Under the pieces are notes generated by a model that was not told where the DNA came from, ran no database searches, and saw only the letters and a program-made list of their open reading frames with translations. This document shows, in pieces, positions 31,370 through 62,048 of a stretch of DNA of 64,000 nucleotides. The stretch lies in the IMG/VR virus record IMGVR_UViG_3300009370_001221, positions 124,001 through 188,000 of that record, one strand, 5' to 3'. Made by a program: the position numbers and the translations under genes. Position 1 is the first letter of the stretch. Every line of letters starts with the position of its first letter.

Positions 31370-31398
31370 TTGACAATTTGTTGTATCTAATGTATAAT
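31370..31398 (+). promoter_or_regulatory. Perfect consensus sigma70 promoter heading the modification cluster, probably leaderless
   Basis: TTGACA (31370-75), 17 nt, TATAAT (31393-98). ATG at 31406 after 7 nt, no SD. Confidence 0.88.
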
Positions 31399-31405
31399 AT
31401 TTTAT

Positions 31406-31756
31406 ATGAGTGTGAAAGATACAGTAAAAAAGAAATTTAACCAAAAAGTGGCTCACGCAACAAAGCGTGAGACCACTTTAGGTTTACTATCCCTCCCTTA
31501 TAACAGCGGTTTATTTAAAATAACAAGAGAATTAATTAATTTTGCCGAATTAATGTCGCTACGTTCCGCGATAGCAGAGTCGGCAGACTTAAAAGCAAAT
31601 CCCACAGTAGTATTAGATTCATATGATAATCCTATATTAATAGAAAATCCACGAGACTTTACTGAGAAACTGTGGCAACGATACTATGAAGTCAATAACG
31701 AATATCTCGAAGATATCAAAACTATTAGGGCAACAAGAAAACCCGAACAAATCTAA
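31406..31756 (+). CDS. Hypothetical protein
   Basis: 116-aa ORF directly behind the promoter and coupled to the next gene (TAATG). Confidence 0.7.
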   Translation: MSVKDTVKKKFNQKVAHATKRETTLGLLSLPYNSGLFKITRELINFAELMSLRSAIAESADLKANPTVVLDSYDNPILIENPRDFTEKLWQRYYEVNNEYLEDIKTIRATRKPEQI

Positions 31757-32595
31757 TGCCTACCGAAAATGGCGTACTATTATTTGCATACGATAACGAA
31801 TCTATAAAATATACAGAACTTGCCAAACTCTGTGCGTTACTTGTACGCAAACACTTACCTAATACAGGAGTTACATTAGTCACTGATAACTCTATCGATG
31901 GTCCTTTTGATGATGTTATATTGGTCGAGACAGGTAACAGTGGACGTAGAACATTTAGAAACCCTAATGGAGAGACAGAAGAAGTCACTTGGCATAATAA
32001 AACTCGCCCACAAGCATACGATTTAACTCCGTATGAAAAAACATTACTGCTAGATGTAGACTATCTAATGTTTAATAACTCATTGCAGTGGCTATTTCAA
32101 TCTGATAAAGAGTTAATATGCCACAATACCGCTTATGATATTACAGGAAAAGAAAGTCTTATAGACGAAAAAATGCTACATTGGAGTAGTATTCCAATGT
32201 TATGGGCAACTGTATTATACTTTACTAAAAATAATACAGCAAAAGAATTTTTTAATCTAGTTAAATTAGTACAAGACAACTATCAATACTATTATAACTT
32301 ATATAATTTCAAGATGGGTCCATACAGGAATGACTATGCTATAAGTATTGCATATAATTTATTAAGTTTGGAACATTATATCTTAGATCCACTCTTTACC
32401 CTCCCCTCACAATTTACACTTGAAAATGTTCGAGAAGATGGAACTCTTGTGTATAACGCTGATGGAGAGATAGCATACATAAAAAATACTAATGTGCATA
32501 TTATGAACAAACATAGTATTATAGAACATGTAGATGAAATATTAAGATACGCAACACAACCAACACTTACACATGAAGCGAATCAAGGAACATGA
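31756..32595 (+). CDS. GT-A fold glycosyltransferase (GT8-like)
   Basis: YDLTPYEKTLLLDVDY (DxD), WATVLYF, RNDYAISIA. Confidence 0.7.
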   Translation: MPTENGVLLFAYDNESIKYTELAKLCALLVRKHLPNTGVTLVTDNSIDGPFDDVILVETGNSGRRTFRNPNGETEEVTWHNKTRPQAYDLTPYEKTLLLDVDYLMFNNSLQWLFQSDKELICHNTAYDITGKESLIDEKMLHWSSIPMLWATVLYFTKNNTAKEFFNLVKLVQDNYQYYYNLYNFKMGPYRNDYAISIAYNLLSLEHYILDPLFTLPSQFTLENVREDGTLVYNADGEIAYIKNTNVHIMNKHSIIEHVDEILRYATQPTLTHEANQGT

Positions 32596-33436
32596 TGAAC
32601 AAATTGGGTATTTTACATTTGTTCAGAATAACGACGATACTGATTATTTAAAACTAGCATACGCCTGTGGATTAAGTTTAAAAGCAACACAAACCATAAA
32701 CAAGTTTGCTATTGCTGTAGACAACAATACTAAACAACAATTAACAGAGAAACATTACAAAGTATTTGACTATGTAATAGACATTCCGTGGGGTGATGAT
32801 AGTGAGGATGACGCATGGAAATTAGGCAATGAATGGAAAGCATGGTCAATAACACCATTTAAAGAGACAGTTAAGTTAGATTGTGATATTGTGTTTACAC
32901 GCAATATAGATCATTGGTGGACATTTATGCGTGAGCAGGAAGTAATGATTGCGACAAATGTTCGCAAACTAGACGGTTCTATATCTAACTCACGCAAGTA
33001 CAGAAAACTCTTTGATATCAATAACTTACCTAACACTTATAGTGGGTTTATGTACTTCAGGTATGGTGAAAATAGTCTAAAACTATTTAAAACATTAAAA
33101 TGGGTTTATAAAAATTGGGATGAAGTATCACAACAATTAAAGAATTGTAGGGATGAAAAGCCTACAACTGATGTTGCGTTGGCAATAGCATTAGTGTTAC
33201 AAGAAGCAGAGTATACACATACAAACAATGTATTAGATTATCCAACATTTGTGCATATGAAAAATAGCATACTAGGTTGGCCAGAATCGCATAAGATAGA
33301 AGATATTATTAATATAGAGTATAGTGATGATGTTGGATTAATATTAGGTGTAGAGCCACAAATATATCCTGTACATGGCGCAGAGTGTAAAGAATACCTA
33401 GCAGATAAAACAATAGAATACTATGAAAGGAATTAA
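32573..33436 (+). CDS. GT-A fold glycosyltransferase (GT8-like), paralogue of previous gene
   Basis: ITPFKETVKLDCDIVF (DxD), YSGFMYF, TTDVALAIA, HMK. Confidence 0.7.
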   Translation: MKRIKEHDEQIGYFTFVQNNDDTDYLKLAYACGLSLKATQTINKFAIAVDNNTKQQLTEKHYKVFDYVIDIPWGDDSEDDAWKLGNEWKAWSITPFKETVKLDCDIVFTRNIDHWWTFMREQEVMIATNVRKLDGSISNSRKYRKLFDINNLPNTYSGFMYFRYGENSLKLFKTLKWVYKNWDEVSQQLKNCRDEKPTTDVALAIALVLQEAEYTHTNNVLDYPTFVHMKNSILGWPESHKIEDIINIEYSDDVGLILGVEPQIYPVHGAECKEYLADKTIEYYERN

Positions 33437-33860
33437 GCCATTAAACAAAAGTTCTGCTATAAAAGGCATTGATGATTTAATTGAAGCAATTGAAACTCAT
33501 GTTGAATTAGAATATGAAAAGCCTGACTATTGTTTATATTATACTGATCAAGGTATAATATATGAAGCATCGCCAGAAGAAGATATAAGAACACATATCA
33601 AGGTTCCTTCTAAATGGTTAGATACTAATCACATTACTGACTGGGTAATAGTTAAAGGCAAGTTAGAACCAGTTAAACATGATGTACATGACCGTTTAAG
33701 AAAATATACTAAAGTAACACACGCAACAGAATTAGATCCTGACTTGCCTGTGTATGTAACAGAAAAAGATCATAGAATTATCAAAAAAGTCATTACTGCT
33801 GATGAAGTAGTATTCAATAGAGATGAAAATTATTATCAATTACAACAGGAGAAAAGATGA
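33423..33860 (+). CDS. Hypothetical protein
   Basis: 145-aa ORF overlapping both neighbours in the operon. Confidence 0.6.
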   Translation: MKGIKPLNKSSAIKGIDDLIEAIETHVELEYEKPDYCLYYTDQGIIYEASPEEDIRTHIKVPSKWLDTNHITDWVIVKGKLEPVKHDVHDRLRKYTKVTHATELDPDLPVYVTEKDHRIIKKVITADEVVFNRDENYYQLQQEKR

Positions 33861-34084: not shown

Positions 34085-34093
34085 GGAAATACA

Positions 34094-34393
34094 ATGTGGG
34101 AACCATGGTTATTAATGATAATGTTAAGTGTGGGTCCATTTAATGGACAATACAATGGTGAGAATGATATTTGGTATAATATACGAATGCATTCAGAAGG
34201 AGAATGCCGACAAGCGGCAAGAGATATGATGAGAACACATCGTATATTCCAGCACCTCAATCCTACTTTACATATGGATGTTATATGTAGAAAAGAATTA
34301 CTTGCAGGAACATACAATCAAACAAACTCAAATTTTCCAAAATGTATTAATTATCGTCAATGTCTTGACATGTTTAAAAAAGAATATGACTGA
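34094..34393 (+). CDS. Hypothetical protein, hydrophobic N-terminus, 4 Cys
   Basis: GAGG RBS upstream, fills the operon gap. Confidence 0.5.
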   Translation: MWEPWLLMIMLSVGPFNGQYNGENDIWYNIRMHSEGECRQAARDMMRTHRIFQHLNPTLHMDVICRKELLAGTYNQTNSNFPKCINYRQCLDMFKKEYD

Positions 34394-35312
34394 AATAGTT
34401 GACATTGCTGACTTAGATTGCGTATACTTAACATACGACGAGCCACAAAAAGATGAGTTTTGGGCCAAGATACTAAACATGGTACCTTGGGCAATACACA
34501 TTGATGGTGTATATGGTTCGGATGCCGCCCATAAAGCGGCTGCCAATGCTTGTGATACTGAGCGATTTGTTTTAATAGATGGTGATAATTTACCTGATCC
34601 AGAGTTTTTTAACTTACAACTAACACTAGATGATGTTACTAAACATTGTGTGTTTAGATGGAAGGGTCGTAATGTTATTAACGGACTAATGTATGGCAAT
34701 GGTGGTTTAAGTTGCTGGCCTGTAGACTTTGTTTTAAACATGACTACACATGAAAACACTGATGGTTCTGATGAAACATTAGTAGAGTTTTGTTTTGACG
34801 ATAATTACAGACCAATGCATAACTGCTATAGTACAACATACCCAAATGGCTCAGCATTACACGCATGGCGTGCTGGGTTTAGAGAAGGTGTTAAAATGGT
34901 TTTAAACAAAGGAACTAAACCTGATTTAAAAACATTTGAAGAGCAAGTACATGCTCGCAACTTCGATAACTTATGCATATGGCAAACTGTTGGGCGTGAT
35001 GTTGAGCATGGCATATGGAGTATATACGGCGCACGTTTAGGGACATTTTTAACAATGCTTACTGATTGGGAGCATGTTAATGTAAGGGACTTCAAATATT
35101 TAAATGAAATGTTTAATGCAGAATATAAAGATAAGGATCCTGAAATAGAATCACAAGTAATAGGTGAAATATTACAAAACAAACTAAACATGCCTATATG
35201 TGAGATGAGTGCTGAGGCAAGTGTGTTCTTTAAAGCACATTACAGCAAGCATACAAACTACGATATAATGATACAAGAATTAGATGTAATACGCGGCATT
35301 GAAGGTTGGTAA
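34386..35312 (+). CDS. Phage GT-A-like glycosyltransferase/nucleotidyltransferase-fold protein
   Basis: YLTYDEP...HIDGVYGSDAAHKAAA..CDTERFVLIDGDN (DxD)...YGNGGLSCW...AWRAGFREGVKM. ATG 34386 preferred over the track start 34278. Confidence 0.65.
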   Translation: MTEIVDIADLDCVYLTYDEPQKDEFWAKILNMVPWAIHIDGVYGSDAAHKAAANACDTERFVLIDGDNLPDPEFFNLQLTLDDVTKHCVFRWKGRNVINGLMYGNGGLSCWPVDFVLNMTTHENTDGSDETLVEFCFDDNYRPMHNCYSTTYPNGSALHAWRAGFREGVKMVLNKGTKPDLKTFEEQVHARNFDNLCIWQTVGRDVEHGIWSIYGARLGTFLTMLTDWEHVNVRDFKYLNEMFNAEYKDKDPEIESQVIGEILQNKLNMPICEMSAEASVFFKAHYSKHTNYDIMIQELDVIRGIEGW

Positions 35313-36739
35313 TGGAACTTTATAAAGATAATAAGGGCGACAAAATAGAAGTTAAGGATGGAAAGTTTAAGTCAGATTTCTATAGAAGTGCTGAGGATAT
35401 TAAAGTACAGTTAGACTCAGTGTCTCCATCCTTTTGTCTTGCTAAATGGAATCAAGTTAGTTTACATTTACCTACAGGCTTAAACAACAGTTGCTATCAT
35501 CCACCACTGCATAAAATGGAGTTAGACACTCCATCTGCATTACATAATACACAACATAAGAAAGAAATGCGTAAACTTATGCTAGAAGGCGAACGTCCTA
35601 GCGAGTGCCAGTACTGTTGGAACATAGAAGATACTGGGCATATGAGTGATAGACATTACAGAAGTGGTGAGCCGTGGGCACAGATGGACTTTGATAATAT
35701 AGTTAATGCTCCGTGGGATGCAGATAAGAACCCGCGTTATGTAGAAGTAAACTTTAATCATAACTGTAACTTAAAATGTAGTTACTGTAGTCCACAGTTT
35801 AGTACTGCGTGGGAAAAGGAAATGAAACAACACGGTGCATGGCCTACATCTAAACCACATAACGCACCTGAACACTTTGAGATTAATCCTTGCATACCAC
35901 ACAGCAAATATAATCCTTATGTACATGCGTTTTGGGAATGGTGGCCTGACTTATATAAAGACTTAAAGCATTTCCGTATGACTGGTGGTGAACCTATGAT
36001 GGATAAAAATACGCATAAAGTATTTGATTACATTATAGACAACCCCAAAAGCGACTTACATTTAAACGTTACAAGTAACTTTAGTCCTGTAGACAACAAA
36101 TTGTTTGACAAGTATTTAGATAAAGTTAAACGTATATGTTTAGATGAGAAGGTAGAACACTTTATGCAATACGTTAGTGTAGATAGTTGGATGGAACAAG
36201 CAGAGTATATACGTAATGGGTTAGATTTTAATAAGATGTGTGATAACATCAACACATACTTAACGGAAGTTCCGTATAGAAACTCTTTAACGTTTATTAT
36301 AACATATAATAATTTAAGTGTTTCAGGAATGGATAAGTTATTAGCCTATATACACGGTTTGCGACAAGCATACAGCGAAACTTATCAACGTGTATGGTTT
36401 GATACGCCGTTATTGCGACAGCCTGCTTGGCAAAGCATACAGTTATTGCCTGAACCATATCAAGATATACACGATGAGAACATATGTTGGATGTTGGATA
36501 ACATGGAAGATGAGAAAACTCGCTTTAAAGGCTTTAAGGATTATGAAGTCCAACGTATGCAACGCGACTTGGCGTGGTGGCAAGAGAGTGATAAGTTAGA
36601 TCCAGAGTATATAGACAACTGTAAAGCAGACTTTTATCGCTTTTTTACTGAGCACGACAAACGTCGTGGCACTAATTTTATAAAAACATTCCCTGAAATG
36701 ATATATTGGTGGGAAGAATGTGAGAGGTTAGCACGTTGA
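35312..36739 (+). CDS. Radical SAM protein with N-terminal twitch/SPASM-like domain (#1)
   Basis: CNLKCSYC, TGGEP, N-terminal FCLAKW...SCYHPP...ECQYCW. ATG 35312 overlaps the upstream TAA. Confidence 0.9.
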   Translation: MELYKDNKGDKIEVKDGKFKSDFYRSAEDIKVQLDSVSPSFCLAKWNQVSLHLPTGLNNSCYHPPLHKMELDTPSALHNTQHKKEMRKLMLEGERPSECQYCWNIEDTGHMSDRHYRSGEPWAQMDFDNIVNAPWDADKNPRYVEVNFNHNCNLKCSYCSPQFSTAWEKEMKQHGAWPTSKPHNAPEHFEINPCIPHSKYNPYVHAFWEWWPDLYKDLKHFRMTGGEPMMDKNTHKVFDYIIDNPKSDLHLNVTSNFSPVDNKLFDKYLDKVKRICLDEKVEHFMQYVSVDSWMEQAEYIRNGLDFNKMCDNINTYLTEVPYRNSLTFIITYNNLSVSGMDKLLAYIHGLRQAYSETYQRVWFDTPLLRQPAWQSIQLLPEPYQDIHDENICWMLDNMEDEKTRFKGFKDYEVQRMQRDLAWWQESDKLDPEYIDNCKADFYRFFTEHDKRRGTNFIKTFPEMIYWWEECERLAR

Positions 36740-37644
36740 CTTTTGTAGCGGATATTAAAAAATTACATGTAGAACCCACTACAGTATGCCAGGCAGAGTG
36801 TCCTATGTGTATTAGAACTCTACAGGGTTATCATAGGACTATGGAAAATAAAGAATTATCATTTAATCAATTTAAAACATTAGTAAAACCATTAATACAC
36901 AACTTAGACCATGTACAATTTTGTGGTTCATTTGGAGATCCTATCGCGTGTAAAGATTTACGCATAATGATGTTATGGATTGGACAAATGAATCAACAAA
37001 CGCATGTTTCAATACACACAAATGGTGGGATAGGAAGCACAAAATTATGGACTCATATTGCTTATCTAACAAGAAGCAACCCTGCTAGTCGTGTTATATT
37101 TGCTATTGATGGATTAGAAGATACTAATCATTTATATAGAAAAAATGTTGTATGGAAAACCTTAATGAAAAATGCTAAAACATTTATCAATGCAGGAGGT
37201 GTAGGGCAAGTGGACATGATTGTATTTAAACACAACGAACACCAGATAGACGAAGCAAAACAATTAGCAAAGGATATGGGATTTAAAGCATTTAAAACTA
37301 AAGCAACTAGCAGATTTGCACATAACCCCAACACTGGATTGGAGCCGCCTACCAATCATTCATTTGAAATGAAAGATAAAGAGTTTGCATGCCACGTGGA
37401 AAAACAGAAAAGTGTTTATTTAAGTGCAGAAGGATTATGGTATCCATGTTGTTGGACACACGTAGCACATGCACAAAAAGATGACCAGTGGGGTGATCCT
37501 ATAGTAAATATCAATGATAGATCAACGAAATGGTATAATTTAGAAAAGAACATACTATCTAAACATTTAGATAAAGTATGCCATAGAGCGTGTGCTACAA
37601 CAGCATTTAGCGGTCAATGGACAACTGAGCAATACTTCTCATGA
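36736..37644 (+). CDS. Radical SAM protein with C-terminal SPASM-like domain (#2)
   Basis: CQAECPMC, GSFGDP, C-terminal C...GLWYPCCW...CHRAC. TTG start. Confidence 0.85.
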   Translation: MTFVADIKKLHVEPTTVCQAECPMCIRTLQGYHRTMENKELSFNQFKTLVKPLIHNLDHVQFCGSFGDPIACKDLRIMMLWIGQMNQQTHVSIHTNGGIGSTKLWTHIAYLTRSNPASRVIFAIDGLEDTNHLYRKNVVWKTLMKNAKTFINAGGVGQVDMIVFKHNEHQIDEAKQLAKDMGFKAFKTKATSRFAHNPNTGLEPPTNHSFEMKDKEFACHVEKQKSVYLSAEGLWYPCCWTHVAHAQKDDQWGDPIVNINDRSTKWYNLEKNILSKHLDKVCHRACATTAFSGQWTTEQYFS

Positions 37645-39005: not shown

Positions 39006-39022
39006 TACGCTAAAGTGGGCGG

Positions 39023-39067
39023 GGCCGAGTCACACCCAGCCGAAACACCTGGTTTGGCGAAATTTTT
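39023..39067 (+). repeat. 45-bp element, copy A (inverted partner at 53287-53331)
   Basis: GGCCGAGTCACACCCA-GCCGAAAC-ACCTGGT-T-TGGCGAAATTTTT, 38/45 identical to the reverse complement of 53287-53331. Confidence 0.9.
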
Positions 39068-39122
39068 TACACAGTAGATACCATATCGGAACATAACAAT
39101 GCAGGGCGGAGGATTTGAATAT

Positions 39123-46011: not shown

Positions 46012-46022
46012 AGGAAGGTGAC

Positions 46023-54706: not shown

Positions 54707-55871
54707 AATTCTCTCAAATACTACGGCAACTAAATTCCAAGTAAGAAGAAAATATAGAGAACGTAAAGGTCCTTTATTAGAAAAAGATTATACATGTTGG
54801 TATCCACATCGTAGTCTAACAATTGATCAACTAGGAGAATGTTATATATGTACATGTGAAGCATGGTTACCTTATTCTGTTGGAAATATTTTAGAATTCG
54901 ATGATCTTACCGACATTTGGACTAATAATATTGCTAGAAAACTCCAAAACAATACTAAAACCGGCACAACATTTAAATTTTGTGATACTTCAATTTGTAA
55001 TCCGTGGTCAAAATCGTATCAACAAGCAAGAGCGTTACCATATCAAATTGCAATTTGTACAGATGATAGTTGTAATTTGCGATGCCCTAGTTGTCGTACT
55101 GATCTGATTCATTTTAATAAAGGTCCAATATACGAAAAAAGAAAATTATATACTGATAGAATTACATCGTTAATGAAAGACTTTGATCTACCTGTTTCGT
55201 GTGCTTTGGGTGGTAGTGGAGAGATTTTTAGTTCTAAAATTTTGTCTGATGTTTTGTATAATTATGAGCCAAATGATAAACATCGATTTAAAATTAAAAC
55301 TAATGGAACTCTTATAGATAACCGAGTTAAAGATAGTCCAATTATGCAAAAACTTTCAGAATTTACAATCAGTATTGATGCTGGGAGCAAATCAGTATAT
55401 GATGTTGTAAGACCTCCGGCTAACTGGAATAAATTAAGATCAAATTTAGATTTTTTAAGGGAAAATAATTTTCAATTATCTTTTAATTTTGTCCTCCAAA
55501 AAGCCAATTTATATGATGTAATTAATTTTGCAGATTTATGTGAGCATTATGGTGCTATAGGACACTATGAAGGTATAAATGATTGGGGTACATGGAATTA
55601 CGAAACTTATTTAAAACAAAGAATCCATCAACCTGAAGATGAATTATATTCCGAGTGGAATAAAATTAAAGAACAACTTCTTCAGCATTCATGGAGAGAT
55701 TATTTAATATTTGCTTCTAATATTGATACAGAAAACCAATTTACATATGAGAGATTATATTCCAAACACCCAAACAAGAATTATTTACCGCTAGGATACA
55801 ATGAAAATGATGGGACATACCACAGTGAAAGACATCCGATGCTAGGTCTTAAATGGACATTAGATAATTAA
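54690..55871 (+). CDS. Radical SAM protein with N-terminal SPASM-like domain (#8)
   Basis: CWYPHRSLTIDQLGECYICTC, CNLRCPSC, GGSGE. Confidence 0.88.
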   Translation: MLINRKILSNTTATKFQVRRKYRERKGPLLEKDYTCWYPHRSLTIDQLGECYICTCEAWLPYSVGNILEFDDLTDIWTNNIARKLQNNTKTGTTFKFCDTSICNPWSKSYQQARALPYQIAICTDDSCNLRCPSCRTDLIHFNKGPIYEKRKLYTDRITSLMKDFDLPVSCALGGSGEIFSSKILSDVLYNYEPNDKHRFKIKTNGTLIDNRVKDSPIMQKLSEFTISIDAGSKSVYDVVRPPANWNKLRSNLDFLRENNFQLSFNFVLQKANLYDVINFADLCEHYGAIGHYEGINDWGTWNYETYLKQRIHQPEDELYSEWNKIKEQLLQHSWRDYLIFASNIDTENQFTYERLYSKHPNKNYLPLGYNENDGTYHSERHPMLGLKWTLDN

Positions 55872-55877: not shown

Positions 55878-58800
55878 ATGTACGACAAAATATATAGGAA
55901 AGATTATGATATTCAACAGGCGTCCGAAAGATGTAAAACGAGACATTATTGGTACATTGATAATGGGGTTGATTGTAGTGATTTTGATTTTAATTGGACT
56001 CCTGTTCCATGGGAATCTAGATTTACTCACGTATTCCCTAGTAAATGGCAACGTGACGGAGGTATTAGGTTAGTAAACAAAGACTATCCTAATGGCGATG
56101 TTAAATTTAATAAAGAAAAGCAAGTTAGTAGAGTTCCCATTAAAGATAAATGGGTACTTGATCCTGATACTGATTATATCCATTTTGATTTTAGCTGGCA
56201 TCCAGATACATTTACAGGGGTATATACTTATGTCTTCCCATCACAGTGGCAACGTGATGGAGGTACTAGGTATGTAATAGAGCCTGACGCTCCTATTAAA
56301 TACGTATCTGATCAAGTAACAGTAAGAATACCAAATAAGGATAATTGGAGGCTGAACAAATATACTGACTATACTAATTTCGACTTTAGTTGGCATCCAG
56401 ATTTATCGCAAGGCGTGTATAATTATATATTCCCATCACAGTGGCAACGTGATGGCGGCACACAATATATGGTTGACCGGCTCGCTTTTCCTAAGTACGT
56501 ATCCGATCAAATAACAAAACGCATTAGTGATTTAAGATATTGGACAATACCAGATGATGTAGATACTGATGCGTTTGACTTTAGTTGGCATCCTGATCCA
56601 GCACATGGATCATGGACATACGTTTTTCCTTCATTATGGCAACGTAATAGTAGCGTAACGTATCGTATAATGCCAGACGCACCAAAAAAATATGTAAGTG
56701 ATCAAGTAATACGTCCACTACCTAATAAAAAAGATTGGATAATTCCTGACAATATAGATGAGGATAGTTTTGATTTTAGTTGGATGCCTGACCCAGATGA
56801 TCCTCCATACATATATGTTTTTGGCACACAATGGCAAAAGGATGGCGGCCCAATATATAAAGTAGAAGGTGCTACTGAAATATCTTACTGTACTGAACAA
56901 TATGCAAAAGCAGTACCGGGTAGAATGCGTCACTGGCATATAACACCAACAGGCACAGACTATAGTTCATTTGATTTTAGTTGGCATCCAGAAGAGGCAC
57001 AAAAAGACTATAAACACATATTTGGTACACAATGGCAAAGAACAAGTCCTATATATTACTATAGCGGAAGTGATCCTAACCCTAAAGTAAATTACGTAAG
57101 TGACCAACGTGTTACAATGAAAAGTAATGCGTTGCCACGTTACACAATAGAAACAACACTAGAAGATTTAATAGAATCACATCCTGAAGAACGCTTTTGG
57201 GCGTTAAATGCAGAGATGGATTATGACAAGTTTGATTTTAGTTGGCATCCTGATTTAAGTCAAATGGATTATGTCCATGTGTTTGGTTCTCAGTGGCAAA
57301 AGCATAGTCAAACATACTATGTTAATGCTCCTGCTTATTTGAAAGGTAATACCCACTTAAATTTTGTGGGTGATCAAAAGGTAGTAGCGAATAGTACTCT
57401 AGATATATTTTATATGGACAGAGGTGGTGAAGGAAGTAAGGAACGCTTCAATTCACTGGCTCTGAGACACTCTCAGACGCTCAAGACACGCTACTTTGGT
57501 AATACTCGCGATACTTTACTGCGTTGTGCTAAAAAATGCAAGACAAAGCGTTTTTGGGCGGTGTCAAGTGAGAATAGTTATGGTGATTTTAATTTTGACT
57601 GGCATTGTGAGCCATGGCAAAATGGTATGCTCCATGTGTTTGGTTCAAAATGGAATAAATGGAGTAATACGTTCCTTGTAAATGCTGATGACTTTATTCG
57701 TACGTTTGATTGGGCAGATAAAATAGAGGATGTGTATAATTTAAACTTCGTAGAGGATCAACTAGTAACTACACTGGATGATTTAAACAATATTATATTT
57801 TTGGACTTTGGTAACAGTAATGCTGAAGAAGCATATGAAACTGTATACAGTAAGCACCCAAGAGTTAAACGTATACGCTTTTTTGACAACTATTTGGATA
57901 CATTTAAGAGAATAATGGCCAAAGCCGATACAGATTATTTTTGGGTCACTAGTAGCATATGCGATTATAGCCAATTTGACTTTAGTTGGCAACCGGAGCC
58001 GTGGCAGGACACAATGTTACACACATTCCAAAGCGGAGAACAGAAGTTTGGTGATACTTTCTATGTTAATAAGGCACATGCAGAGGAACAGTTAAAAGAT
58101 ATTAAGTTATTGGACTGGTATGACAAAGTAAACTATTGTAATGAGCAAATAGTAACAAGAACAGAGTGGCCTGAAGTAATATATGACACAGATTTAGTTA
58201 CTGCTATAAAAGAACACACATTTGAGTCACCTTATGTTGCTTTTAAACATAGATCAATGGCCGAATATAAAACAAATTACGACCCAAGTGTTTGGCGCTC
58301 AGAAGATCGCTCTTTACACGTACTTTCACAGAGTGGATCTGTGTCCGTAGTACCGAAAGACTGTAAAGAGCAAATTTCAAGGCAAGTTTATGACTATCCC
58401 TATATCTTGCGCCACGAAGGCATTTATATGCCCGATAAACCACAAGATATAGTGTTTATTTCATATGATGAAAAGAATGCCCAGGAAAACTATGAAGTGT
58501 TATTAAAATCCTTTCCATATGCTAAACGAGTTGATGGCGTAGAGGGTATGCTTAATGCTATGCAAGAAGCGGCACGTATATGTGAAACTCCATACTTTTA
58601 TGCTGTATTTGCTAAAACAGTATTGCATGAAAACTTTAAATTCAACTACCAACCCGATTGGTTATCTAATCCTAAAAACTATGTCTTTTATGCGTATAAT
58701 CCTGTGTTAGACTATAGTTATGGACACGGTAGTATTGTTATGTACGATGCAGAGTGGCTTAAGGATGTTACAGAGGCAGAATTAGATATAGATTTTACAA

Positions 58801-59099
58801 CTACACACGAAATAGAAGTAATACCTGAGGTAAGTTGTATAAACGTATTTGACAGTGAATATAGTGCGTGGCGCACAGCGTTTAGAGAAGCATATAAGTT
58901 ATGTGCCAGTAATACTGTAGAGGACAAGTATAGATTAAAGTTATGGACTACAAAAGACAATACAGAGTTTGGAGAGTATAGTAAGCAAGGTGCTTTATGT
59001 GGTGTAGAACATTACAGCAAAATACAAGATGATTTTAATATTACTGACTGGAAGTGGTTAAGGAAGCAATTTGATCTATGGTATTCGCGACCTGTATAG
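55878..59099 (+). CDS. 1073-aa protein with 9 DFSWHPD-type repeats and degenerate GT-A-like domains
   Basis: Repeats FDFSWHPD..Y..F.(S/T)QWQRDGG about every 65 aa. C-terminal FISYDE...RVDGVEG...AWRTAFRE is homologous to 34386-35312. Confidence 0.75.
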   Translation: MYDKIYRKDYDIQQASERCKTRHYWYIDNGVDCSDFDFNWTPVPWESRFTHVFPSKWQRDGGIRLVNKDYPNGDVKFNKEKQVSRVPIKDKWVLDPDTDYIHFDFSWHPDTFTGVYTYVFPSQWQRDGGTRYVIEPDAPIKYVSDQVTVRIPNKDNWRLNKYTDYTNFDFSWHPDLSQGVYNYIFPSQWQRDGGTQYMVDRLAFPKYVSDQITKRISDLRYWTIPDDVDTDAFDFSWHPDPAHGSWTYVFPSLWQRNSSVTYRIMPDAPKKYVSDQVIRPLPNKKDWIIPDNIDEDSFDFSWMPDPDDPPYIYVFGTQWQKDGGPIYKVEGATEISYCTEQYAKAVPGRMRHWHITPTGTDYSSFDFSWHPEEAQKDYKHIFGTQWQRTSPIYYYSGSDPNPKVNYVSDQRVTMKSNALPRYTIETTLEDLIESHPEERFWALNAEMDYDKFDFSWHPDLSQMDYVHVFGSQWQKHSQTYYVNAPAYLKGNTHLNFVGDQKVVANSTLDIFYMDRGGEGSKERFNSLALRHSQTLKTRYFGNTRDTLLRCAKKCKTKRFWAVSSENSYGDFNFDWHCEPWQNGMLHVFGSKWNKWSNTFLVNADDFIRTFDWADKIEDVYNLNFVEDQLVTTLDDLNNIIFLDFGNSNAEEAYETVYSKHPRVKRIRFFDNYLDTFKRIMAKADTDYFWVTSSICDYSQFDFSWQPEPWQDTMLHTFQSGEQKFGDTFYVNKAHAEEQLKDIKLLDWYDKVNYCNEQIVTRTEWPEVIYDTDLVTAIKEHTFESPYVAFKHRSMAEYKTNYDPSVWRSEDRSLHVLSQSGSVSVVPKDCKEQISRQVYDYPYILRHEGIYMPDKPQDIVFISYDEKNAQENYEVLLKSFPYAKRVDGVEGMLNAMQEAARICETPYFYAVFAKTVLHENFKFNYQPDWLSNPKNYVFYAYNPVLDYSYGHGSIVMYDAEWLKDVTEAELDIDFTTTHEIEVIPEVSCINVFDSEYSAWRTAFREAYKLCASNTVEDKYRLKLWTTKDNTEFGEYSKQGALCGVEHYSKIQDDFNITDWKWLRKQFDLWYSRPV

Positions 59100-59952
59100 C
59101 ATTAGTAACATCTGATTTTGGTGTTTCGCGTGTTTCCACGCAATCTATAAAGTGTCCTAATTCGTTTTCTAAAGGCGTTCTTCCTGTATAAGGAATAACT
59201 TCAGTTTGTATATCTTTATTCAACCTATTGTTTTCTAACTTACTATGATTAGTAATAGTTAAAGTTTCCTCGTCAGTATCCCATATAGCACAGCCTTTGG
59301 TGCCTATTACTGTAACTATTCGTTTACGCATAGGACTATACCAACCAACATCTACTTCTACAGAAACACCGTAACAATGCCCAGTAAAATGTATTCTGTC
59401 ATAAGTTGTAGCATAGTTATTACTTAAATTATAAACGTTAACGTCCTTTACAACTATGGAATTATCCATAAGGTACTGTATAATACTAATGTCATGTGGT
59501 GCTAAACTTAATAATGGTGTTGTTTTAGTTTGATATATGCCCCAATTAAGACGCTCTGTTTTAATATGTCTTATCTCACCTAATACGCCGTCTGTTATTA
59601 GTTGTTTTAGTGTTATACAATGGGGATGATATAAAAATATATGTCCTACCATTAAAACTTGATCATCTTGTAATATGTCGCGTAACTCTTTACATTGCTC
59701 TAATGTTTCTGCTAACGGTTTTTCAACGTAAACATCATGGCCGTTTAGTATTAGTTTTCTTGCTGATGTATAATGATCCCATAATGGTGTAGCAAGTATA
59801 ACAGGGTCTAACGTGTCTATTTCATCAATAGTTTGTCCGTTTTTAATGTCTATAATTTGTGGTACTATGCCCTGCCTTTCAATAGCATGGGCCACCTTTG
59901 TACCCCAGTAGCCTGCGCCAACTAACCAAATTTTATTAATATCAAAAGCCAT
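59041..59952 (-). CDS. Gfo/Idh/MocA family NAD-dependent oxidoreductase (WlbA/WbpB-like sugar 3-dehydrogenase)
   Basis: VGAGYWG, ATP..DH, VYVEKP, LMVGH, DHxxHD-type LAPHDI. Confidence 0.85.
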   Translation of the reverse strand: MAFDINKIWLVGAGYWGTKVAHAIERQGIVPQIIDIKNGQTIDEIDTLDPVILATPLWDHYTSARKLILNGHDVYVEKPLAETLEQCKELRDILQDDQVLMVGHIFLYHPHCITLKQLITDGVLGEIRHIKTERLNWGIYQTKTTPLLSLAPHDISIIQYLMDNSIVVKDVNVYNLSNNYATTYDRIHFTGHCYGVSVEVDVGWYSPMRKRIVTVIGTKGCAIWDTDEETLTITNHSKLENNRLNKDIQTEVIPYTGRTPLENELGHFIDCVETRETPKSDVTNAIQVANTIDQIASLTTSSQ

Positions 59953-61075
59953 TTGCTGTTTCTATAATATAATCTTGTTGTTCGTCTGTTAAACTATGAT
60001 AGCAAGGTAGACTTACTATGCTATGAGCAACTCTTTCTGCATTTGGACAATTACCCGGATAATTTTCATAAGCAGGTTGTTTTGTCATTGGAACACGATA
60101 ATGTACATTACATTGTATGCCGTTATTGTTCATATAGCTTATAAAATCATCCCTGTATTGCTCAAGTAATGTACCAAAGTATCCAGGAATTTCCCGCATC
60201 ATTATAACGTAAACATACCAGGTATGTGTATTATCAGGAAGTGCTTGTGGTGTTACAAACTTATCTTGATCAAGCATTTCATTATATTTTGTGCATATTT
60301 CACGTTTACGTTCAAGCCAATTGGCCAAATAAGGTAATTTTGCCTCTACAATTTTTGCTTGTATGTTATCTATTCTAGCATTATAACCCATTGTGTGATA
60401 TAACCACTTATCATTCCTGCCATGATCTCTATACATTCGTGCCTTGTCAATTAGTCCTTTCTTGCCAGTAATAGCACCAGCGTCACCCATCGCACCTAAA
60501 TTTTTAACAGGATTAAAACTAAAACAAGTTAAGTCTACTAAATTACCAACACGTTGTCCTTTATATTTTGCACCAAAACTTTGTGCGGCATCTTCAATTA
60601 ACCGCAAGCCATGATAATCGTCACTAGAATGGTTATCTACTATCTCTTTTAGTTTATCAATATCTGGTGTTTGCCCATAAGTGTCTACAAACAATATTGC
60701 TCGAGTCTTAGTGTTTATTGCTTCTTCTACTTTGTTTACATCAATTAAATAATTATGGTCTATATCCACAAATACAGGAGTAGCACCTACTTGTAAAATT
60801 GCTTCAGCCGTGCTTACAAAAGTATGTGGTGTAGTAATTATTTCTTGTCCGGTCCAGTCCAATTGAAGTGATAACAATGCACACAATAAAGCAGTTGATC
60901 CACTACCTGTTGAAGCACATGCTTCAGCACCTGTGTATTCTGCCATAACGTTTTCAAAATTATCTGTTACTGGACCAGTAATAAAATGACTGCCGTCTAT
61001 ACAATATTGTATAGCGGCGTCTATATCTTCTTTTGCTTCAATATATTGACTTTTAAGATCTGTAAAAGGAATCAT
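59942..61075 (-). CDS. DegT/DnrJ/EryC1/StrS PLP-dependent sugar aminotransferase
   Basis: MIPFTDLKSQY, IEDAAQSFG, SFNPVKNLGAMGDAG, GYNARID, SLPCY. Confidence 0.93.
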   Translation of the reverse strand: MIPFTDLKSQYIEAKEDIDAAIQYCIDGSHFITGPVTDNFENVMAEYTGAEACASTGSGSTALLCALLSLQLDWTGQEIITTPHTFVSTAEAILQVGATPVFVDIDHNYLIDVNKVEEAINTKTRAILFVDTYGQTPDIDKLKEIVDNHSSDDYHGLRLIEDAAQSFGAKYKGQRVGNLVDLTCFSFNPVKNLGAMGDAGAITGKKGLIDKARMYRDHGRNDKWLYHTMGYNARIDNIQAKIVEAKLPYLANWLERKREICTKYNEMLDQDKFVTPQALPDNTHTWYVYVIMMREIPGYFGTLLEQYRDDFISYMNNNGIQCNVHYRVPMTKQPAYENYPGNCPNAERVAHSIVSLPCYHSLTDEQQDYIIETANGF

Positions 61076-62048
61076 CTTTATCTCTTAACCATTCCCAAGT
61101 ATCAACAAACCCTTCTTCAATGTCTATTATGGGATCATATCCGAGTAAGTTTCTTGCTTTAGTATTACTACATGTGCCACGTTTACCAAACGCTTCGTTA
61201 TGCTCTGCTATTTTTATTTGACTATTGCTGTTAGTTACTTCAATTGCTACTGTTGCCGCTTCAACTAGAGTGCGGCTTCTTTCTCTTGTAATGTTGAATG
61301 TTTCATCAGCGGCCCTATCGTTTAATACACATTGCACCATACCTTTTATAAAGTCATCCATGTGTGTAAAGTCTATACTTGAGTCTCCATTAACATATAT
61401 AGTTTCATTGTTTGCGGCCTGCAATAAAAATTTCGGAACAACTCTGTCTATTATATCACGTGGTCCATATACAGCACTCGGACGTACAATAGTATATTCT
61501 ACATTGTGTTCGTTACAGTATCGTTTAACAATGCCTTCACTCGCTAGTTTTAATATACCATAATCGCTTTTGGGTTGCATTTGATTCCAATCTTCTCTCA
61601 TGCCATAAAAATGTCCGCCTGATGGCCAATCACCATATACCATACTGCTACTAACGTGGATAAATCGTTTAATGATACCTTGACTACCATATAATAAATT
61701 GTATACGCCTTTAACAAGGGAGTCGCAAGCCATTACGGGGTCATATTGTACTAATTTTACGCGAGAGAATGCCGCTAGGTTAACTATAATGTCTGGTTCG
61801 TATTTCTCTATTACCCTAGCAATACCTTTAGTGTTTTTAATATTTTCGTGTACAGGTGCCCGTAGTTTAGTTTGACTCATAAACTTTTGGCGATTAGAGG
61901 TCGTTATCCAAAACTCTCTAGGAGGGATTACGCCGTAATCAGTCTGTATATCTACAATAAGGATAGAGTGGCCAAGTGTTTCTAGTGCAACGGATAAATT
62001 ATGCCCTATAAACCCTGCGCCACCAGCAATTAGTATTTTCATAGCCAA
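61053..62048 (-). CDS. NAD-dependent nucleotide-sugar epimerase/dehydratase (extended SDR)
   Basis: AGGAGFIG, SSSMVYG, YGILK (YxxxK), RPSAVYGP, DFTHMDD. Confidence 0.9.
   Translation of the reverse strand: MAMKILIAGGAGFIGHNLSVALETLGHSILIVDIQTDYGVIPPREFWITTSNRQKFMSQTKLRAPVHENIKNTKGIARVIEKYEPDIIVNLAAFSRVKLVQYDPVMACDSLVKGVYNLLYGSQGIIKRFIHVSSSMVYGDWPSGGHFYGMREDWNQMQPKSDYGILKLASEGIVKRYCNEHNVEYTIVRPSAVYGPRDIIDRVVPKFLLQAANNETIYVNGDSSIDFTHMDDFIKGMVQCVLNDRAADETFNITRERSRTLVEAATVAIEVTNSNSQIKIAEHNEAFGKRGTCSNTKARNLLGYDPIIDIEEGFVDTWEWLRDKDDSFYRS

What the first reader, a model, noticed from the sequence alone, without database searches (positions are those of the whole stretch)
31370..62048. About 30-kb phage-encoded glycan or macromolecule tailoring system adjacent to the tail genes
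Seen: one co-directional, overlap-coupled run from a perfect sigma70 promoter (31370) encodes 3 GT-A-like proteins, 8 radical SAMs, 4 SGNH-like proteins, a NodU-type carbamoyltransferase, a sulfotransferase-like protein and a pseudo-GT repeat protein. A convergent NDP-amino-sugar trio faces it. Known: these classes make O-carbamoyl, O-acetyl and sulfate decorations on sugars (e.g. Nod factors, O-antigens), and a phage NodU-family enzyme is known to carbamoylate 5-hydroxymethylcytosine. Inference: an undescribed pathway for glycosylating and decorating virion proteins, remodelling the host surface, or hypermodifying DNA. The cluster uses a host-sigma promoter, not the TAAATA late motif, which suggests early/middle expression and fits DNA or host-surface targets. 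No dCMP hydroxymethylase is seen in this window.
Basis: partly seen in the sequence, partly recalled or inferred. Interest (0 to 1): 0.85.

Follow-up and report, generated by a model that had tools for sequence, protein, structure and literature searches.

The report
Phage radical-SAM and glycosyltransferase tailoring cassette
An uncultured marine jumbo phage carries a conserved, early-promoter-driven cassette of sugar-adding enzymes, five distinct radical-SAM enzymes and sugar-decorating enzymes that nobody has described; it is common in ocean phages, and what it modifies is still unknown.

Summary
A perfect sigma-70 promoter sits at 31370-31398. Behind it lie eight radical-SAM genes, two GT8-like and one GT-A-like transferases, a repeat protein ending in a GT-A-like domain, SGNH-like proteins, an O-carbamoyltransferase and a convergent NDP-sugar trio.

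It is not one 30-kb system. Comparison with more than 60 related phage contigs shows a core of about 11 gene families in fixed order. The other genes, including the NDP-sugar trio and the sulfotransferase-like gene, are lineage-specific.

The core starts at a promoter conserved in six relatives. It lies directly after the tail-fibre genes and lacks the phage's late motif. Its proteins have no predicted membrane segments. The five radical-SAM types are ancient, separately retained orthologue groups with an N-terminal twitch domain.

In another phage lineage and in a bacterial MAG, family members sit among other glycosyltransferases, a sugar dehydrogenase and GDSL enzymes.

Best reading: a soluble glycan-building and tailoring cassette acting on a cytoplasmic acceptor, most likely the phage's own fibre proteins. 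The acceptor is inferred only. Ralstonia phage RsoM2USA carries the cassette and makes it testable.

The parts
28815..30359 (+). Tail-fibre-like protein (514 aa), immediately upstream of the cassette. Present in 1-4 tandem copies in relatives. Candidate context or acceptor.
   Evidence: PHROG tail-fibre and virion protein hits. Found in 49 of 49 related loci. ATAAATA late motif at 28765.
30452..31366 (+). Protein of 304 aa with 32% Ser+Thr; last gene before the promoter. Candidate glycan acceptor (inference only).
   Evidence: Composition. Found in 49 of 49 related loci. No family hit.
31370..31398 (+). Perfect sigma-70-type promoter at the head of the cassette.
   Evidence: 12 of 12 match. 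Two perfect sites in the window against 0.12 expected. A matching promoter lies at the same position in L002, L004, L009, L010, L012 and L007.
31406..31756 (+). Conserved small protein (116 aa), first gene of the cassette; function unknown. It does not look like a RiPP precursor.
   Evidence: Homologues at 26-31% identity in the same position in L004, L009, L010, L012, L007 and RsoM2USA gp354. No Pfam or PHROG hit.
31756..32595 (+). GT8-like (glycogenin-like) glycosyltransferase 1.
   Evidence: Joint profile with its paralogue hits glycogenin-1 at E=1.2e-6. D-x-D and C-terminal His/Lys are conserved. Found in 49 of 49 loci.
32573..33436 (+). GT8-like glycosyltransferase 2, a paralogue of the previous gene.
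   Evidence: Weak Pfam Nucleotid_trans hit, 17.3 bits against a cut-off of 22. Found in 49 of 49 loci.
33423..33860 (+). Lineage-specific 145-aa protein, unknown function.
   Evidence: Found only in L002 and L022.
34386..35312 (+). Divergent GT-A-like protein (308 aa). The true start is probably 34386, not 34278. Family known only from phages.
   Evidence: At least 8000 clusters at 90% identity, all about 308 aa. Invariant DGD motif. Model pLDDT 80. Only weak GT-A or nucleotidyltransferase fold matches, best E 0.012. The ESM Atlas holds virus-only clusters.
35306..36739 (+). Radical SAM type A (N-terminal twitch).
   Evidence: NF033640 313 bits. Orthologue group A in the tree. Found in 49 of 49 loci.
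36736..37644 (+). Accessory radical SAM (302 aa) in the usual domain order with a Cys-rich C-terminus; lineage-specific insertion.
   Evidence: Pfam and NCBIfam hits. Absent from L002 and L004; found in 4 of 49 loci.
37641..39005 (+). Radical SAM type B (N-terminal twitch), the type most widely linked to the carbamoyltransferase.
   Evidence: NF033640 322 bits. 51% identical to RsoM2USA gp202, which lies 3 genes from the carbamoyltransferase. Group B in the tree.
39004..39720 (+). Lineage-specific insertion holding a terminator-like hairpin, one arm of a 64-nt inverted repeat, and small ORFs, one with a membrane-like segment.
   Evidence: Absent in L002. Hairpin at 39039-39058. Inverted repeat I1. 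Hydrophobic segment.
39721..41049 (+). Radical SAM type C, copy 1.
   Evidence: NF033640 397 bits. Group C in the tree.
41072..42316 (+). Radical SAM type C, copy 2; a duplication not seen in most relatives.
   Evidence: NF033640 371 bits. Group C in the tree.
42282..43667 (+). Radical SAM type D.
   Evidence: NF033640 342 bits. Group D in the tree.
43601..44959 (+). Radical SAM type E.
   Evidence: NF033640 274 bits. Group E in the tree.
44941..47797 (+). Inserted cargo, not part of the core: GlnII-like glutamine synthetase, PurC, PurE and YqeY.
   Evidence: Pfam and NCBIfam hits. In L004 and L009 the type E radical SAM is followed directly by the 368-aa gene. The GS-like gene is in 1 of 49 loci (L022, the window's own lineage); PurC, PurE and YqeY are in 0 of 49.
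47794..48900 (+). Conserved 368-aa core protein with a fold not found in the PDB.
   Evidence: Model pLDDT 82, pTM 0.83. No PDB match, best E 0.6. Ten BFVD matches, all uncharacterised phage proteins. Homologues follow the radical-SAM array in relatives.
48890..50744 (+). Two paralogous SGNH-like / DUF6071 proteins (324 and 302 aa).
   Evidence: 37% identical to each other. DUF6071 41.8 bits against a cut-off of 27. GDS and His motifs. Weak GDSL profile hits. RsoM2USA has three DUF6071 genes around its type B radical SAM and carbamoyltransferase.
50892..51134 (+). Smr-domain protein (cargo).
   Evidence: Pfam Smr 43 bits. Found in 0 of 49 loci.
51134..51721 (+). Third SGNH-like protein (195 aa).
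   Evidence: Weak Lipase_GDSL_2 hit. Motifs. Distant paralogue of 49836.
51687..53288 (+). O-carbamoyltransferase of the NodU/CmcH/TobZ family.
   Evidence: Carbam_trans_N 136 bits and Carbam_trans_C 164 bits. NovN, GdmN and TobZ matches. 53% identical to L004 and 43% to RsoM2USA gp199.
53332..54021 (+). Fourth SGNH-like protein (229 aa); lineage-specific.
   Evidence: GDS motif and a late His seen by eye. Found in 0 of 49 loci.
54014..54706 (+). Possible sulfotransferase (230 aa); lineage-specific.
   Evidence: PAPS-loop-like motifs seen by eye. PDB profile E=0.2. Only 22 homologous clusters.
54690..55871 (+). Accessory radical SAM (393 aa) with an N-terminal SPASM-like region; not NF033640.
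   Evidence: Pfam SPASM plus Radical_SAM. NF033640 36.7 bits, below cut-off. Found in 4 of 49 loci.
55878..59099 (+). Protein of 1073 aa: eight ~65-residue 'FDFSWHPD...QWQRDGG' repeats followed by a C-terminal GT-A-like domain related to the 34386 protein.
   Evidence: family D2. 37% identical to the 1026-aa protein downstream of the carbamoyltransferase in L004.
59041..62048 (-). Convergent NDP-sugar trio: a UDP-GlcNAc 3-dehydrogenase-like oxidoreductase, a DegT/PseC-like aminotransferase and an NDP-hexose 4,6-dehydratase-like SDR. Lineage-specific supply genes.
   Evidence: Pfam. NCBIfam, all below equivalog cut-offs. The first two are in 0 of 49 loci and an SDR is in 7 of 49. RsoM2USA has an SDR, gp358, near its cassette.

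Best explanation
This is a conserved cassette of soluble cytoplasmic enzymes in a jumbo T4-like phage. It is transcribed from a host sigma-70-type (early) promoter.

Proposed mechanism (inferred):
1. Two GT8-like transferases, a divergent GT-A-like transferase and a large repeat-plus-GT-A-like protein add sugars from nucleotide sugars to the acceptor.
2. Five non-redundant radical-SAM enzymes with an N-terminal twitch (auxiliary Fe-S) domain carry out radical tailoring steps on the sugars or their nucleotide-sugar precursors. Candidate reactions are oxidation, deoxygenation, epimerisation or C-C chemistry.
3. SGNH-like proteins and an O-carbamoyltransferase add or remove acyl groups and add carbamoyl groups.

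The most likely acceptor is the phage's own fibre proteins, which are encoded directly upstream.

What is shown: the gene families, their conserved order, the promoter and the absence of membrane segments. What is inferred: the chemistry of each step and the acceptor.
For: ONE UNIT
- Fixed order in 49 of 49 IMG/VR loci with full flanks, and in L004-L012.
- A promoter conserved at the head.
- No late motif inside the cassette.
- Five radical-SAM orthologue groups, each strongly supported and each with one member per lineage.

GLYCAN CHEMISTRY
- The GT8-like profile hits glycogenin at E=1e-6.
- The GT-A-like protein has an invariant DGD motif and weak GT-A fold matches.
- The carbamoyltransferase belongs to the family of NovN, GdmN and TobZ.
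- In an independent lineage (L011), type A and B radical SAMs, DUF6071 and the carbamoyltransferase sit with a GT2, two GT7-lectin fusions, a methyltransferase, a UDP-glucose/GDP-mannose dehydrogenase and a GDSL enzyme.
- In a bacterial MAG, a family member lies among GT2, GT4, GDSL and B12 radical-SAM genes.
- An NDP-sugar SDR lies near the cassette in RsoM2USA, and an NDP-sugar trio lies near it here.
- The N-terminal domain aligns with the twitch domain of BtrN, a carbohydrate-type radical-SAM dehydrogenase. The core is closest to a RiPP SPASM enzyme, then to viperin and MoaA.

CYTOPLASMIC ACCEPTOR
- No module protein has a membrane-like segment, so there is no priming transferase, flippase or polymerase.

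FIBRE PROTEINS AS ACCEPTOR
- In the marine lineage (49 of 49 loci) the cassette directly follows the fibre genes and a 32% Ser/Thr protein; in RsoM2USA it follows virion genes.
- No terminator separates the cassette from those late genes, so late read-through is possible.
- Several bacterial family members are fused to TPR or Sel1 repeats, which usually bind proteins.
Against: - No acceptor was identified by any test. The fibre-protein link rests on adjacency and composition alone.
- An early promoter fits DNA or host targets at least as well as virion proteins.
- No radical-SAM enzyme of this family has a known reaction.
- The closest solved core by sequence is a peptide-modifying SPASM enzyme, 8vpo.
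- A radical-SAM cassette in the order B-D-E-B occurs next to an integrase in bacterial contigs without any glycosyltransferase. The radical SAMs therefore can work without the phage transferases.
- In L011 the cassette is not next to recognisable fibre genes.
- The GT-A and SGNH assignments are weak.
Confidence: 0.42

Rival explanations
1. Host envelope remodelling. The cassette modifies host lipopolysaccharide core or another envelope glycan at the cytoplasmic face early in infection. Possible purposes are blocking superinfection or stopping progeny from sticking to debris.
For: - Early-type promoter and no late motif.
- From general knowledge, bacterial GT8 enzymes are mostly soluble LPS-core transferases.
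- T4-like cyanophages carry 'LPS' clusters with carbamoyltransferases, epimerases and aminotransferases that were interpreted this way (PMC1079782, PMC3037559).
- The one cultured carrier infects a Gram-negative host.
Against: - The cassette has no membrane protein, priming transferase, flippase or ligase.
- It is fixed next to fibre genes rather than among host-takeover genes.
- None of its core families occurs in the cyanophage clusters apart from the carbamoyltransferase.
Confidence: 0.2
2. Protein or peptide maturation. The twitch radical SAMs act directly on a phage or host protein, making cross-links, epimerisations or similar changes as RiPP maturases do. The transferases would be a separate add-on.
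For: - The closest solved relative of the core is a RiPP cyclopropyl synthase, at E=7e-9.
- Bacterial members are fused to TPR or Sel1 repeats.
- The radical-SAM cassette occurs alone next to an integrase.
- A small conserved protein opens the operon.
Against: - The 116-aa protein has no Cys-, Ser- or Thr-rich core, no leader-core pattern and looks folded.
- No RRE/PqqD, protease or exporter was detected.
- Association with glycosyltransferases and sugar-nucleotide enzymes recurs in three independent contexts.
Confidence: 0.13
3. DNA hypermodification. Sugars and carbamoyl groups are placed on a hydroxymethylated base of the phage genome.
For: - Early-type promoter.
- A phage carbamoyltransferase of this superfamily makes 5-carbamoyloxymethylcytosine (PMC8670742).
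- RsoM2USA has two thymidylate-synthase-like genes (PMC8504454).
Against: - Characterised 5hmC carbamoyltransferases sit within about 3 kb of a ThyA-type hydroxymethylase, dCMP deaminase and MazG-type genes. Here and in relatives the neighbours are radical SAMs, SGNH-like genes, an FNR-like gene and an Fe-S assembly gene.
- The window encodes ThyX, which points to ordinary thymidylate synthesis.
- The GT7-lectin fusions in L011 point to glycan or protein acceptors.
- The rest of the genome could not be inspected.
Confidence: 0.08
4. Soluble product. The cassette makes a free modified nucleotide, nucleotide sugar or small glycoside that acts on the host or on rival phages, as an anti-defence or signalling molecule.
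For: - All five twitch types show weak viperin-like similarity (22-34 bits) and MoaA-like similarity.
- All proteins are soluble.
- From general knowledge, the enzyme mix resembles aminoglycoside and nucleoside antibiotic pathways (BtrN, TobZ, DegT).
Against: - The viperin similarity is at the level of the shared radical-SAM core only.
- Four transferase-like proteins, one with eight repeats, suggest a polymeric or macromolecular acceptor.
- No exporter is present.
Confidence: 0.1
5. No system. The genes are unrelated auxiliary genes that happen to lie together.
For: The run contains clearly unrelated cargo (PurC, PurE, GS-like, YqeY, Smr) and lineage-specific insertions.
Against: - The core order is identical in 49 of 49 loci and across lineages at only 26-60% protein identity.
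- The promoter is conserved.
- Parts recur together in RsoM2USA, L011, L008 and a marine single-cell contig.
Confidence: 0.04

Closest known systems
'LPS' gene clusters of large T4-like cyanophages (P-SSM2, S-SSM7, S-SM2; PMC1079782, PMC3037559)
   Same: - Marine T4-type phages with clusters of sugar epimerases, aminotransferases, transferases and Nol-like carbamoyltransferases.
- Their function and target are likewise unknown.
- The carbamoyltransferase here matches those phages at 28-30% identity.
   Different: - No cyanophage in the collection has the twitch radical SAMs, the 308-aa GT-A-like protein or the type B radical SAM.
- The present cassette has a fixed position after the fibre genes, its own conserved promoter and five radical-SAM types.
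Virus-encoded virion glycosylation (chlorovirus and mimivirus machinery, including a glycogenin-like GT8, and mycobacteriophage capsid/tail glycosylation). These are recalled from general knowledge; the mycobacteriophage case is mentioned in PMC11256854.
   Same: Soluble virus-encoded GT-A or GT8-type transferases, placed near structural genes, that glycosylate virion proteins in the cytoplasm.
   Different: - None of those systems is known to include radical-SAM enzymes, SGNH-like proteins or a carbamoyltransferase.
- No sequence relationship was tested here beyond the glycogenin hit.
NF033640 N_Twi_rSAM (twitch domain-containing radical SAM protein), with BtrN as the solved twitch-domain enzyme
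   Same: - Six proteins score 273-397 bits against a cut-off of 170.
- They have four invariant N-terminal Cys plus CX3CX2C.
- The N-terminal region aligns with the BtrN twitch domain.
   Different: - No member of the family has a known reaction.
- In BtrN the twitch domain is C-terminal.
- Here five anciently diverged types act side by side.
O-carbamoyltransferases NodU/NolO, TobZ, NovN and GdmN, and the phage 5hmC carbamoyltransferase (PMC8670742)
   Same: Same two-domain architecture and strong sequence matches.
   Different: - It is not a NodU equivalog: 134 bits against a cut-off of 1000.
- It lacks the hydroxymethylase, deaminase and MazG neighbourhood of the DNA-modifying enzymes.
Fe-S-rich T4-like environmental viral genomes (Nishimura et al. 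2017, PMC5332604)
   Same: That paper reports a 183-kb marine T4-like genome with 12 radical-SAM genes and a paaD-type Fe-S gene. L004 likewise carries an FeS_assembly_P gene and an FNR-like gene beside the cassette.
   Different: The paper treats the genes as an Fe-S theme. It does not define the cassette, its order, its transferases or its promoter. I did not test whether that genome belongs to this clade.

Membership tests
Radical SAM superfamily | CX3CX2C cluster motif and a GGE-type SAM-binding motif | tested here: met
   CX3CX2C is present in all eight proteins. GGEP is invariant in the six twitch types. Pfam Radical_SAM scores are 23-29 bits, just under the 29.5-bit cut-off.
NF033640 N_Twi_rSAM | Score above the curated cut-off (170 bits) over the full model | tested here: met
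   The proteins at 35306, 37641, 39721, 41072, 42282 and 43601 score 313, 322, 397, 371, 342 and 274 bits. The proteins at 36736 and 54690 score 35.5 and 36.7 bits and are not members.
NF033640 N_Twi_rSAM | N-terminal twitch domain with Cys ligands for an auxiliary cluster | tested here: met
   Four invariant Cys (C46, C65, C106, C109 in the 39721 protein) lie ahead of the core motif. A Pfam SPASM hit covers residues ~30-100. The region aligns to the BtrN twitch domain. Cluster binding itself cannot be tested here.
Glycosyltransferase family 8 (glycogenin/LgtC type) | Sequence match to GT8 with a D-x-D motif and a C-terminal metal-binding His | tested here: inconclusive
   The profile hits only glycogenins, at E=1.2e-6, but over the first ~100 positions only. 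The second Asp, a late His and a Lys are invariant. No GT8 Pfam hit was found; only Nucleotid_trans at 17.3 bits against a cut-off of 22.
GT-A fold glycosyltransferase (308-aa protein and C-terminus of the 1073-aa protein) | GT-A Rossmann-like fold with a D-x-D motif | tested here: inconclusive
   DGD is invariant in 36 sequences. The top Foldseek matches are all GT-A or nucleotidyltransferase folds, but at E>=0.012 and TM<=0.33. The profile found no PDB sequence hit.
NodU/CmcH/TobZ O-carbamoyltransferases | Carbam_trans_N and Carbam_trans_C domains above their cut-offs | tested here: met
   136 and 164 bits against cut-offs of 24 and 27. NovN, GdmN and TobZ match at E 1e-36 to 1e-54.
NodU proper (NF041651 equivalog) | Score above 1000 bits | tested here: not met
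   134 bits.
5hmC carbamoyltransferase DNA-modification system (PMC8670742) | Carbamoyltransferase within a few kb of a ThyA-type dCMP hydroxymethylase, dCMP deaminase and MazG-type pyrophosphohydrolase | tested here: not met
   None of these genes lies in 31-62 kb of the window, near the carbamoyltransferase of L004-L006, or near that of L011. ThyX lies 9 kb away on the other strand. The rest of the genome was not available.
SGNH/GDSL hydrolase-acyltransferase superfamily | Block I GDS, block III Asn and block V His, plus a family match | tested here: inconclusive
   G9, S11, N77 and two late His are conserved in 16 sequences. The profile hits are nearly all GDSL/SGNH proteins but weak, best E 0.007. 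Pfam GDSL scores 21 bits against a cut-off of 33. DUF6071 is above its cut-off for the 49836 protein.
Sulfotransferase | PAPS-binding 5'-PSB and 3'-PB motifs with a family match | tested here: inconclusive
   Motif-like stretches were seen by eye. There was no Pfam or NCBIfam hit. The PDB profile hits sulfotransferases only at E=0.22.
RiPP biosynthetic cluster | Precursor peptide with leader and core, an RRE/PqqD-like element, and a protease or exporter | tested here: not met
   No such domains were found. The only small conserved ORF looks like a folded protein with no modifiable core. Remote RRE folds were not tested.
Wzx/Wzy- or ABC-dependent surface polysaccharide pathway | Membrane priming transferase, flippase or ABC exporter, polymerase or ligase | tested here: not met
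   No membrane-like segment occurs in any conserved protein of the run, and no such Pfam families were found.
Prokaryotic viperin (pVip) defence | Significant full-length match to pVip models | tested here: not met
   Only partial hits of 22-34 bits over the shared core. NF038283 scores 20-30 bits against a cut-off of 180.

The most novel reading that the evidence does not exclude
The five N-terminal-twitch radical-SAM enzymes, together with phage-only transferases and a protein of unseen fold, install a new kind of radical-tailored glycan or cross-linked glycopeptide on the fibres of an abundant clade of ocean jumbo phages. This chemistry would have no characterised counterpart. It would shape host recognition or virion durability in the sea.
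Probability: 0.3. Interest if true: 0.85.

Novelty: new variant of a known kind. Interest (0 to 1): 0.68.

Why it matters
- Abundance: the cassette is widespread. At least 594 IMG/VR contigs carry it, some up to 354 kb long, and the 308-aa protein alone has more than 8000 clusters at 90% identity.
- Neglect: it has no PHROG family, no literature and no cultured marine representative.
- Chemistry: it holds five separately conserved members of a radical-SAM family of more than 10,000 clusters, none with a known reaction. Working out one reaction would annotate a very large family.
- Structure: one core protein has a fold that gave no PDB match.
- Biology: if the target is the virion, this would be radical-SAM-dependent virion glycan tailoring, which I did not find described in any phage. 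If the target is the host surface or DNA, it would be a new early takeover or protection route.
- Testability: Ralstonia phage RsoM2USA carries both halves of the cassette, so ordinary genetics and mass spectrometry can address the question.

Tried and rejected
- Nucleotide search of 31370-51000 against 50,697 phage records found no match.
- PHROG scans of ten unknown proteins found nothing.
- ESM Atlas searches returned only unnamed virus clusters for the 308-aa protein and nothing usable for the 368-aa protein.
- PDB sequence searches gave no meaningful hits with one radical SAM, the 308-aa profile or the 368-aa profile.
- A plasmid search for a radical-SAM homologue gave only two marginal hits.
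- A Vibrio phage K566 locus with distant radical SAMs gave no useful context.
- The genome-contig scan returned only MAG contigs. Eight of the twelve repeat the phage cassette or its rSAM-carbamoyltransferase subset (L007-L012, L018) and look like phage DNA binned into MAGs labelled with different taxa. L013-L016 carry only a radical-SAM cassette, in L016 beside an integrase and housekeeping genes; L017 showed one hit. The scan therefore gave no host.
- The first alignment (A1) included a wrongly chosen RsoM2USA ORF, later shown to be a DNA ligase. I rebuilt it as A3.
- PADLOC found no defence-system membership.
- Literature searches for N-terminal SPASM or twitch enzymes, or radical SAM with carbamoyltransferase in phages, found nothing relevant.
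- I considered the 116-aa protein as a RiPP precursor and rejected it on its sequence pattern.
- I considered the whole 30 kb as one operon-like system and rejected it on synteny.
- Rfam and tRNA scans of the window were empty.

Full report
**What the window is**

The window comes from a large T4-type myovirus.
- It encodes gp46/gp47-like nuclease subunits, a gp55-like late sigma factor, a baseplate hub and a gp6-like wedge protein.
- The wedge protein is about 35% identical to those of jumbo phages such as Atu_ph07, SCTP-2 and GAP32.
- No phage in the 50,697-record collection matches the region at DNA level.
- Two IMG/VR contigs are 99.8-99.9% identical to 24.4-45.3 kb of the window, so the same phage population was sampled elsewhere.

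**Checking the observation**

The promoter is real.
- TTGACA-17-TATAAT lies at 31370-31398, in the 39-nt gap before the first gene.
- Only two perfect sites exist in 64 kb, against 0.12 expected.
- The other perfect site precedes the gp47-like nuclease gene, which is an early-class gene in T4 (general knowledge).

- There are eight radical-SAM proteins, all with CX3CX2C.
- There is a two-domain O-carbamoyltransferase.
- On the minus strand lie a GFO/IDH/MocA oxidoreductase, a DegT aminotransferase and an NDP-hexose epimerase/dehydratase.
- The two proteins at 31756 and 32573 are paralogues. Their joint profile hits only glycogenins (GT8), at E=1e-6, and conserves D-x-D and a late His.
- The next protein probably starts at 34386 and is 308 aa long. 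It has an invariant DGD motif. A fair model (pLDDT 80) gives top fold matches that are all GT-A or nucleotidyltransferase folds, but they are weak.
- The 1073-aa protein has eight ~65-residue repeats and a C-terminal copy of that 308-aa domain.
- The four SGNH-like proteins and the sulfotransferase-like protein rest on motifs and weak hits.

**What belongs together**

I compared the window with these related sequences:
- a close relative, L002;
- a marine lineage at about 50% protein identity, L004-L006;
- eight MAG-labelled contigs that repeat the phage cassette or part of it;
- 80 IMG/VR loci.

The gene order is fixed in 49 of 49 loci that have full flanks:
1. fibre protein, in 1-4 copies
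2. Ser/Thr-rich protein
3. promoter
4. small protein
5. GT8-like
6. GT8-like
7. GT-A-like
8. radical SAM A
9. radical SAM B
10. radical SAM C
11. radical SAM D
12. radical SAM E
13. 368-aa protein
14. SGNH/DUF6071-like protein
15. carbamoyltransferase

Two caveats apply. The loci were selected through the 308-aa protein, and flanks stop at 10 kb. Counts for downstream genes are therefore lower bounds.

These genes are absent from other lineages: PurC, PurE, the GS-like gene, YqeY, Smr, the 302-aa and 393-aa radical SAMs, the 39.0-39.7 kb insert, the sulfotransferase-like gene and the NDP-sugar trio. In L004 and L009 the 368-aa gene follows radical SAM E directly.

A tree of 51 radical SAMs gives five strongly supported groups, each with one member per lineage. 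The duplications are therefore old, and each type has been kept.

**Transcription**

- A sigma-70-type promoter occupies the same spot in L002, L004, L009, L010, L012 and L007. This holds even though the first gene is only 26-31% identical between lineages.
- The heptamer ATAAATA occurs 4 times against 45.8 ± 6.3 expected. All four lie just upstream of genes near 3.8 kb and 28 kb, and none lies in 31-62 kb. It behaves as a purged late-promoter core.
- The cassette is therefore an early-class unit.
- No terminator-like site was found between the end of the last late gene (31366) and the cassette, so late read-through is possible.

**What the cassette does**

Three independent contexts tie the radical-SAM family to sugar chemistry.
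- The cassette itself.
- A different lineage, L011 (a 248-kb contig). There, radical SAMs A and B, DUF6071 and the carbamoyltransferase sit with a methyltransferase, a GT2, two GT7-lectin fusions, a UDP-glucose/GDP-mannose dehydrogenase and a GDSL enzyme.
- A bacterial MAG, where a Sel1-fused family member lies among GT2, GT4, GDSL and B12 radical-SAM genes.

Other observations bear on the mechanism.
- The N-terminal domain of the radical SAMs has four invariant Cys and aligns with the twitch domain of BtrN.
- By sequence, the radical-SAM core is closest to a RiPP SPASM enzyme, then to viperin and MoaA.
- No conserved protein has a membrane-like segment. The cassette therefore cannot prime, flip or polymerise a surface polysaccharide by itself. 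This points to a cytoplasmic acceptor.
- In the marine lineage the cassette sits directly after the fibre genes and a 32% Ser/Thr protein; in RsoM2USA it sits after virion genes.
- Several bacterial homologues carry TPR or Sel1 fusions.

Together these make virion protein glycosylation the leading hypothesis, but no test addressed the acceptor.

The other readings remain open: host envelope, direct protein maturation, DNA and a soluble product. The DNA reading is weakened because the neighbourhood typical of 5hmC carbamoyltransferases is missing. A radical-SAM-only cassette (B-D-E-B) lies beside an integrase in bacterial contigs. The radical SAMs can therefore work without the phage transferases.

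**Relation to what is known**

- The nearest described thing is the set of 'LPS' clusters in large cyanophages, whose role is also unknown (PMC1079782, PMC3037559). They share only the carbamoyltransferase family.
- A marine survey noted a T4-like genome with 12 radical-SAM genes but did not define a cassette (PMC5332604).
- The core proteins have no PHROG family.
- The 368-aa protein has a confident model with no PDB match and only uncharacterised phage matches.
- The twitch family counts 10,476 clusters at 50% identity, and I know of no member with an assigned reaction.
- Among the 50,697 phage records, the 308-aa gene and a close type B radical SAM were found only in RsoM2USA. There the cassette is split in two: gp354-349 lie next to virion genes, and gp199-203 lie elsewhere. 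All of these genes are annotated as hypothetical.

**Verdict**

The finding is real and interesting, but its extent was overstated and its target is unknown. I rate it a new variant of a known kind, namely phage-encoded glycan gene clusters. Its distinguishing features are a conserved five-member radical-SAM core, phage-only transferases and a conserved early promoter.

Noticed in passing
window 3845-3892, 28074-28080, 28765-28771: The heptamer ATAAATA occurs only 4 times against 45.8 ± 6.3 expected. All four lie just upstream of genes (the late sigma gene, a virion gene and two fibre-region genes). It looks like a late-promoter core that is purged elsewhere.
   Followed up: partly
window 39004-39067 and 53287-53350: A 64-nt inverted repeat, 75% complementary, whose arms lie right after the stops of radical SAM B and the carbamoyltransferase, 14.2 kb apart. 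Each arm contains a GC-rich hairpin. It may be a shared terminator or a mobile regulatory element.
   Followed up: partly
window 13517-28069: A single ORF of 4850 aa between the baseplate wedge gene and the fibre genes, 12% Thr. RsoM2USA has a >288 kDa virion protein in the same place.
   Followed up: no
window 44941-47797: A GlnII-like glutamine synthetase (377 bits, below the 500-bit cut-off), PurC, PurE and YqeY are inserted inside the cassette and overlap-coupled to radical SAM E. The block is present only in this lineage.
   Followed up: partly
window 2980-3008 (minus strand): The second perfect sigma-70 promoter of the window, just upstream of the gp47-like nuclease gene.
   Followed up: no
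L004 about 2870-2900; L009 about 1830-1858: In two relatives the spacer between the -35 and -10 boxes of the cassette promoter is a GC-rich palindrome (GGGGCC..GCCCC; GGCGC..GCGCC). It could be an operator or stem-loop.
   Followed up: no
L013-L016 (e.g. L016 3941-12088): Bacterial MAG contigs carry a radical-SAM-only cassette (types B, D, E, B). In L016 it lies next to a phage-type integrase and a T4SS coupling-protein fragment and is flanked by housekeeping genes. This suggests a mobile island.
   Followed up: partly
L007-L012, L018: Contigs carrying the phage cassette or part of it are deposited in MAGs labelled Verrucomicrobia, Bacteriovoracaceae, Legionellales, Rickettsiales, Flavobacteriaceae, Betaproteobacteria and Gammaproteobacteria. 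This is probably phage DNA mis-binned into MAGs, so the labels give no host.
   Followed up: partly
L004 15695-18188: An FNR-like reductase and an FeS_assembly_P (PaaD-like) gene flank the carbamoyltransferase in a related lineage. They may supply electrons or clusters to the radical SAMs.
   Followed up: no
L002 15536-18181: In the close relative a single 881-aa gene call joins a homologue of the 54690 radical SAM to radical SAM E. This is either a fusion or a gene-calling artefact.
   Followed up: no
window 47794-48900: A confident model (pLDDT 82, pTM 0.83) has no PDB fold match. Its only matches are uncharacterised phage proteins, one from Agrobacterium phage Atu_ph07.
   Followed up: yes
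window 39293-39535: A small ORF with one strong membrane-like segment lies inside the lineage-specific insert between radical SAMs B and C.
   Followed up: no
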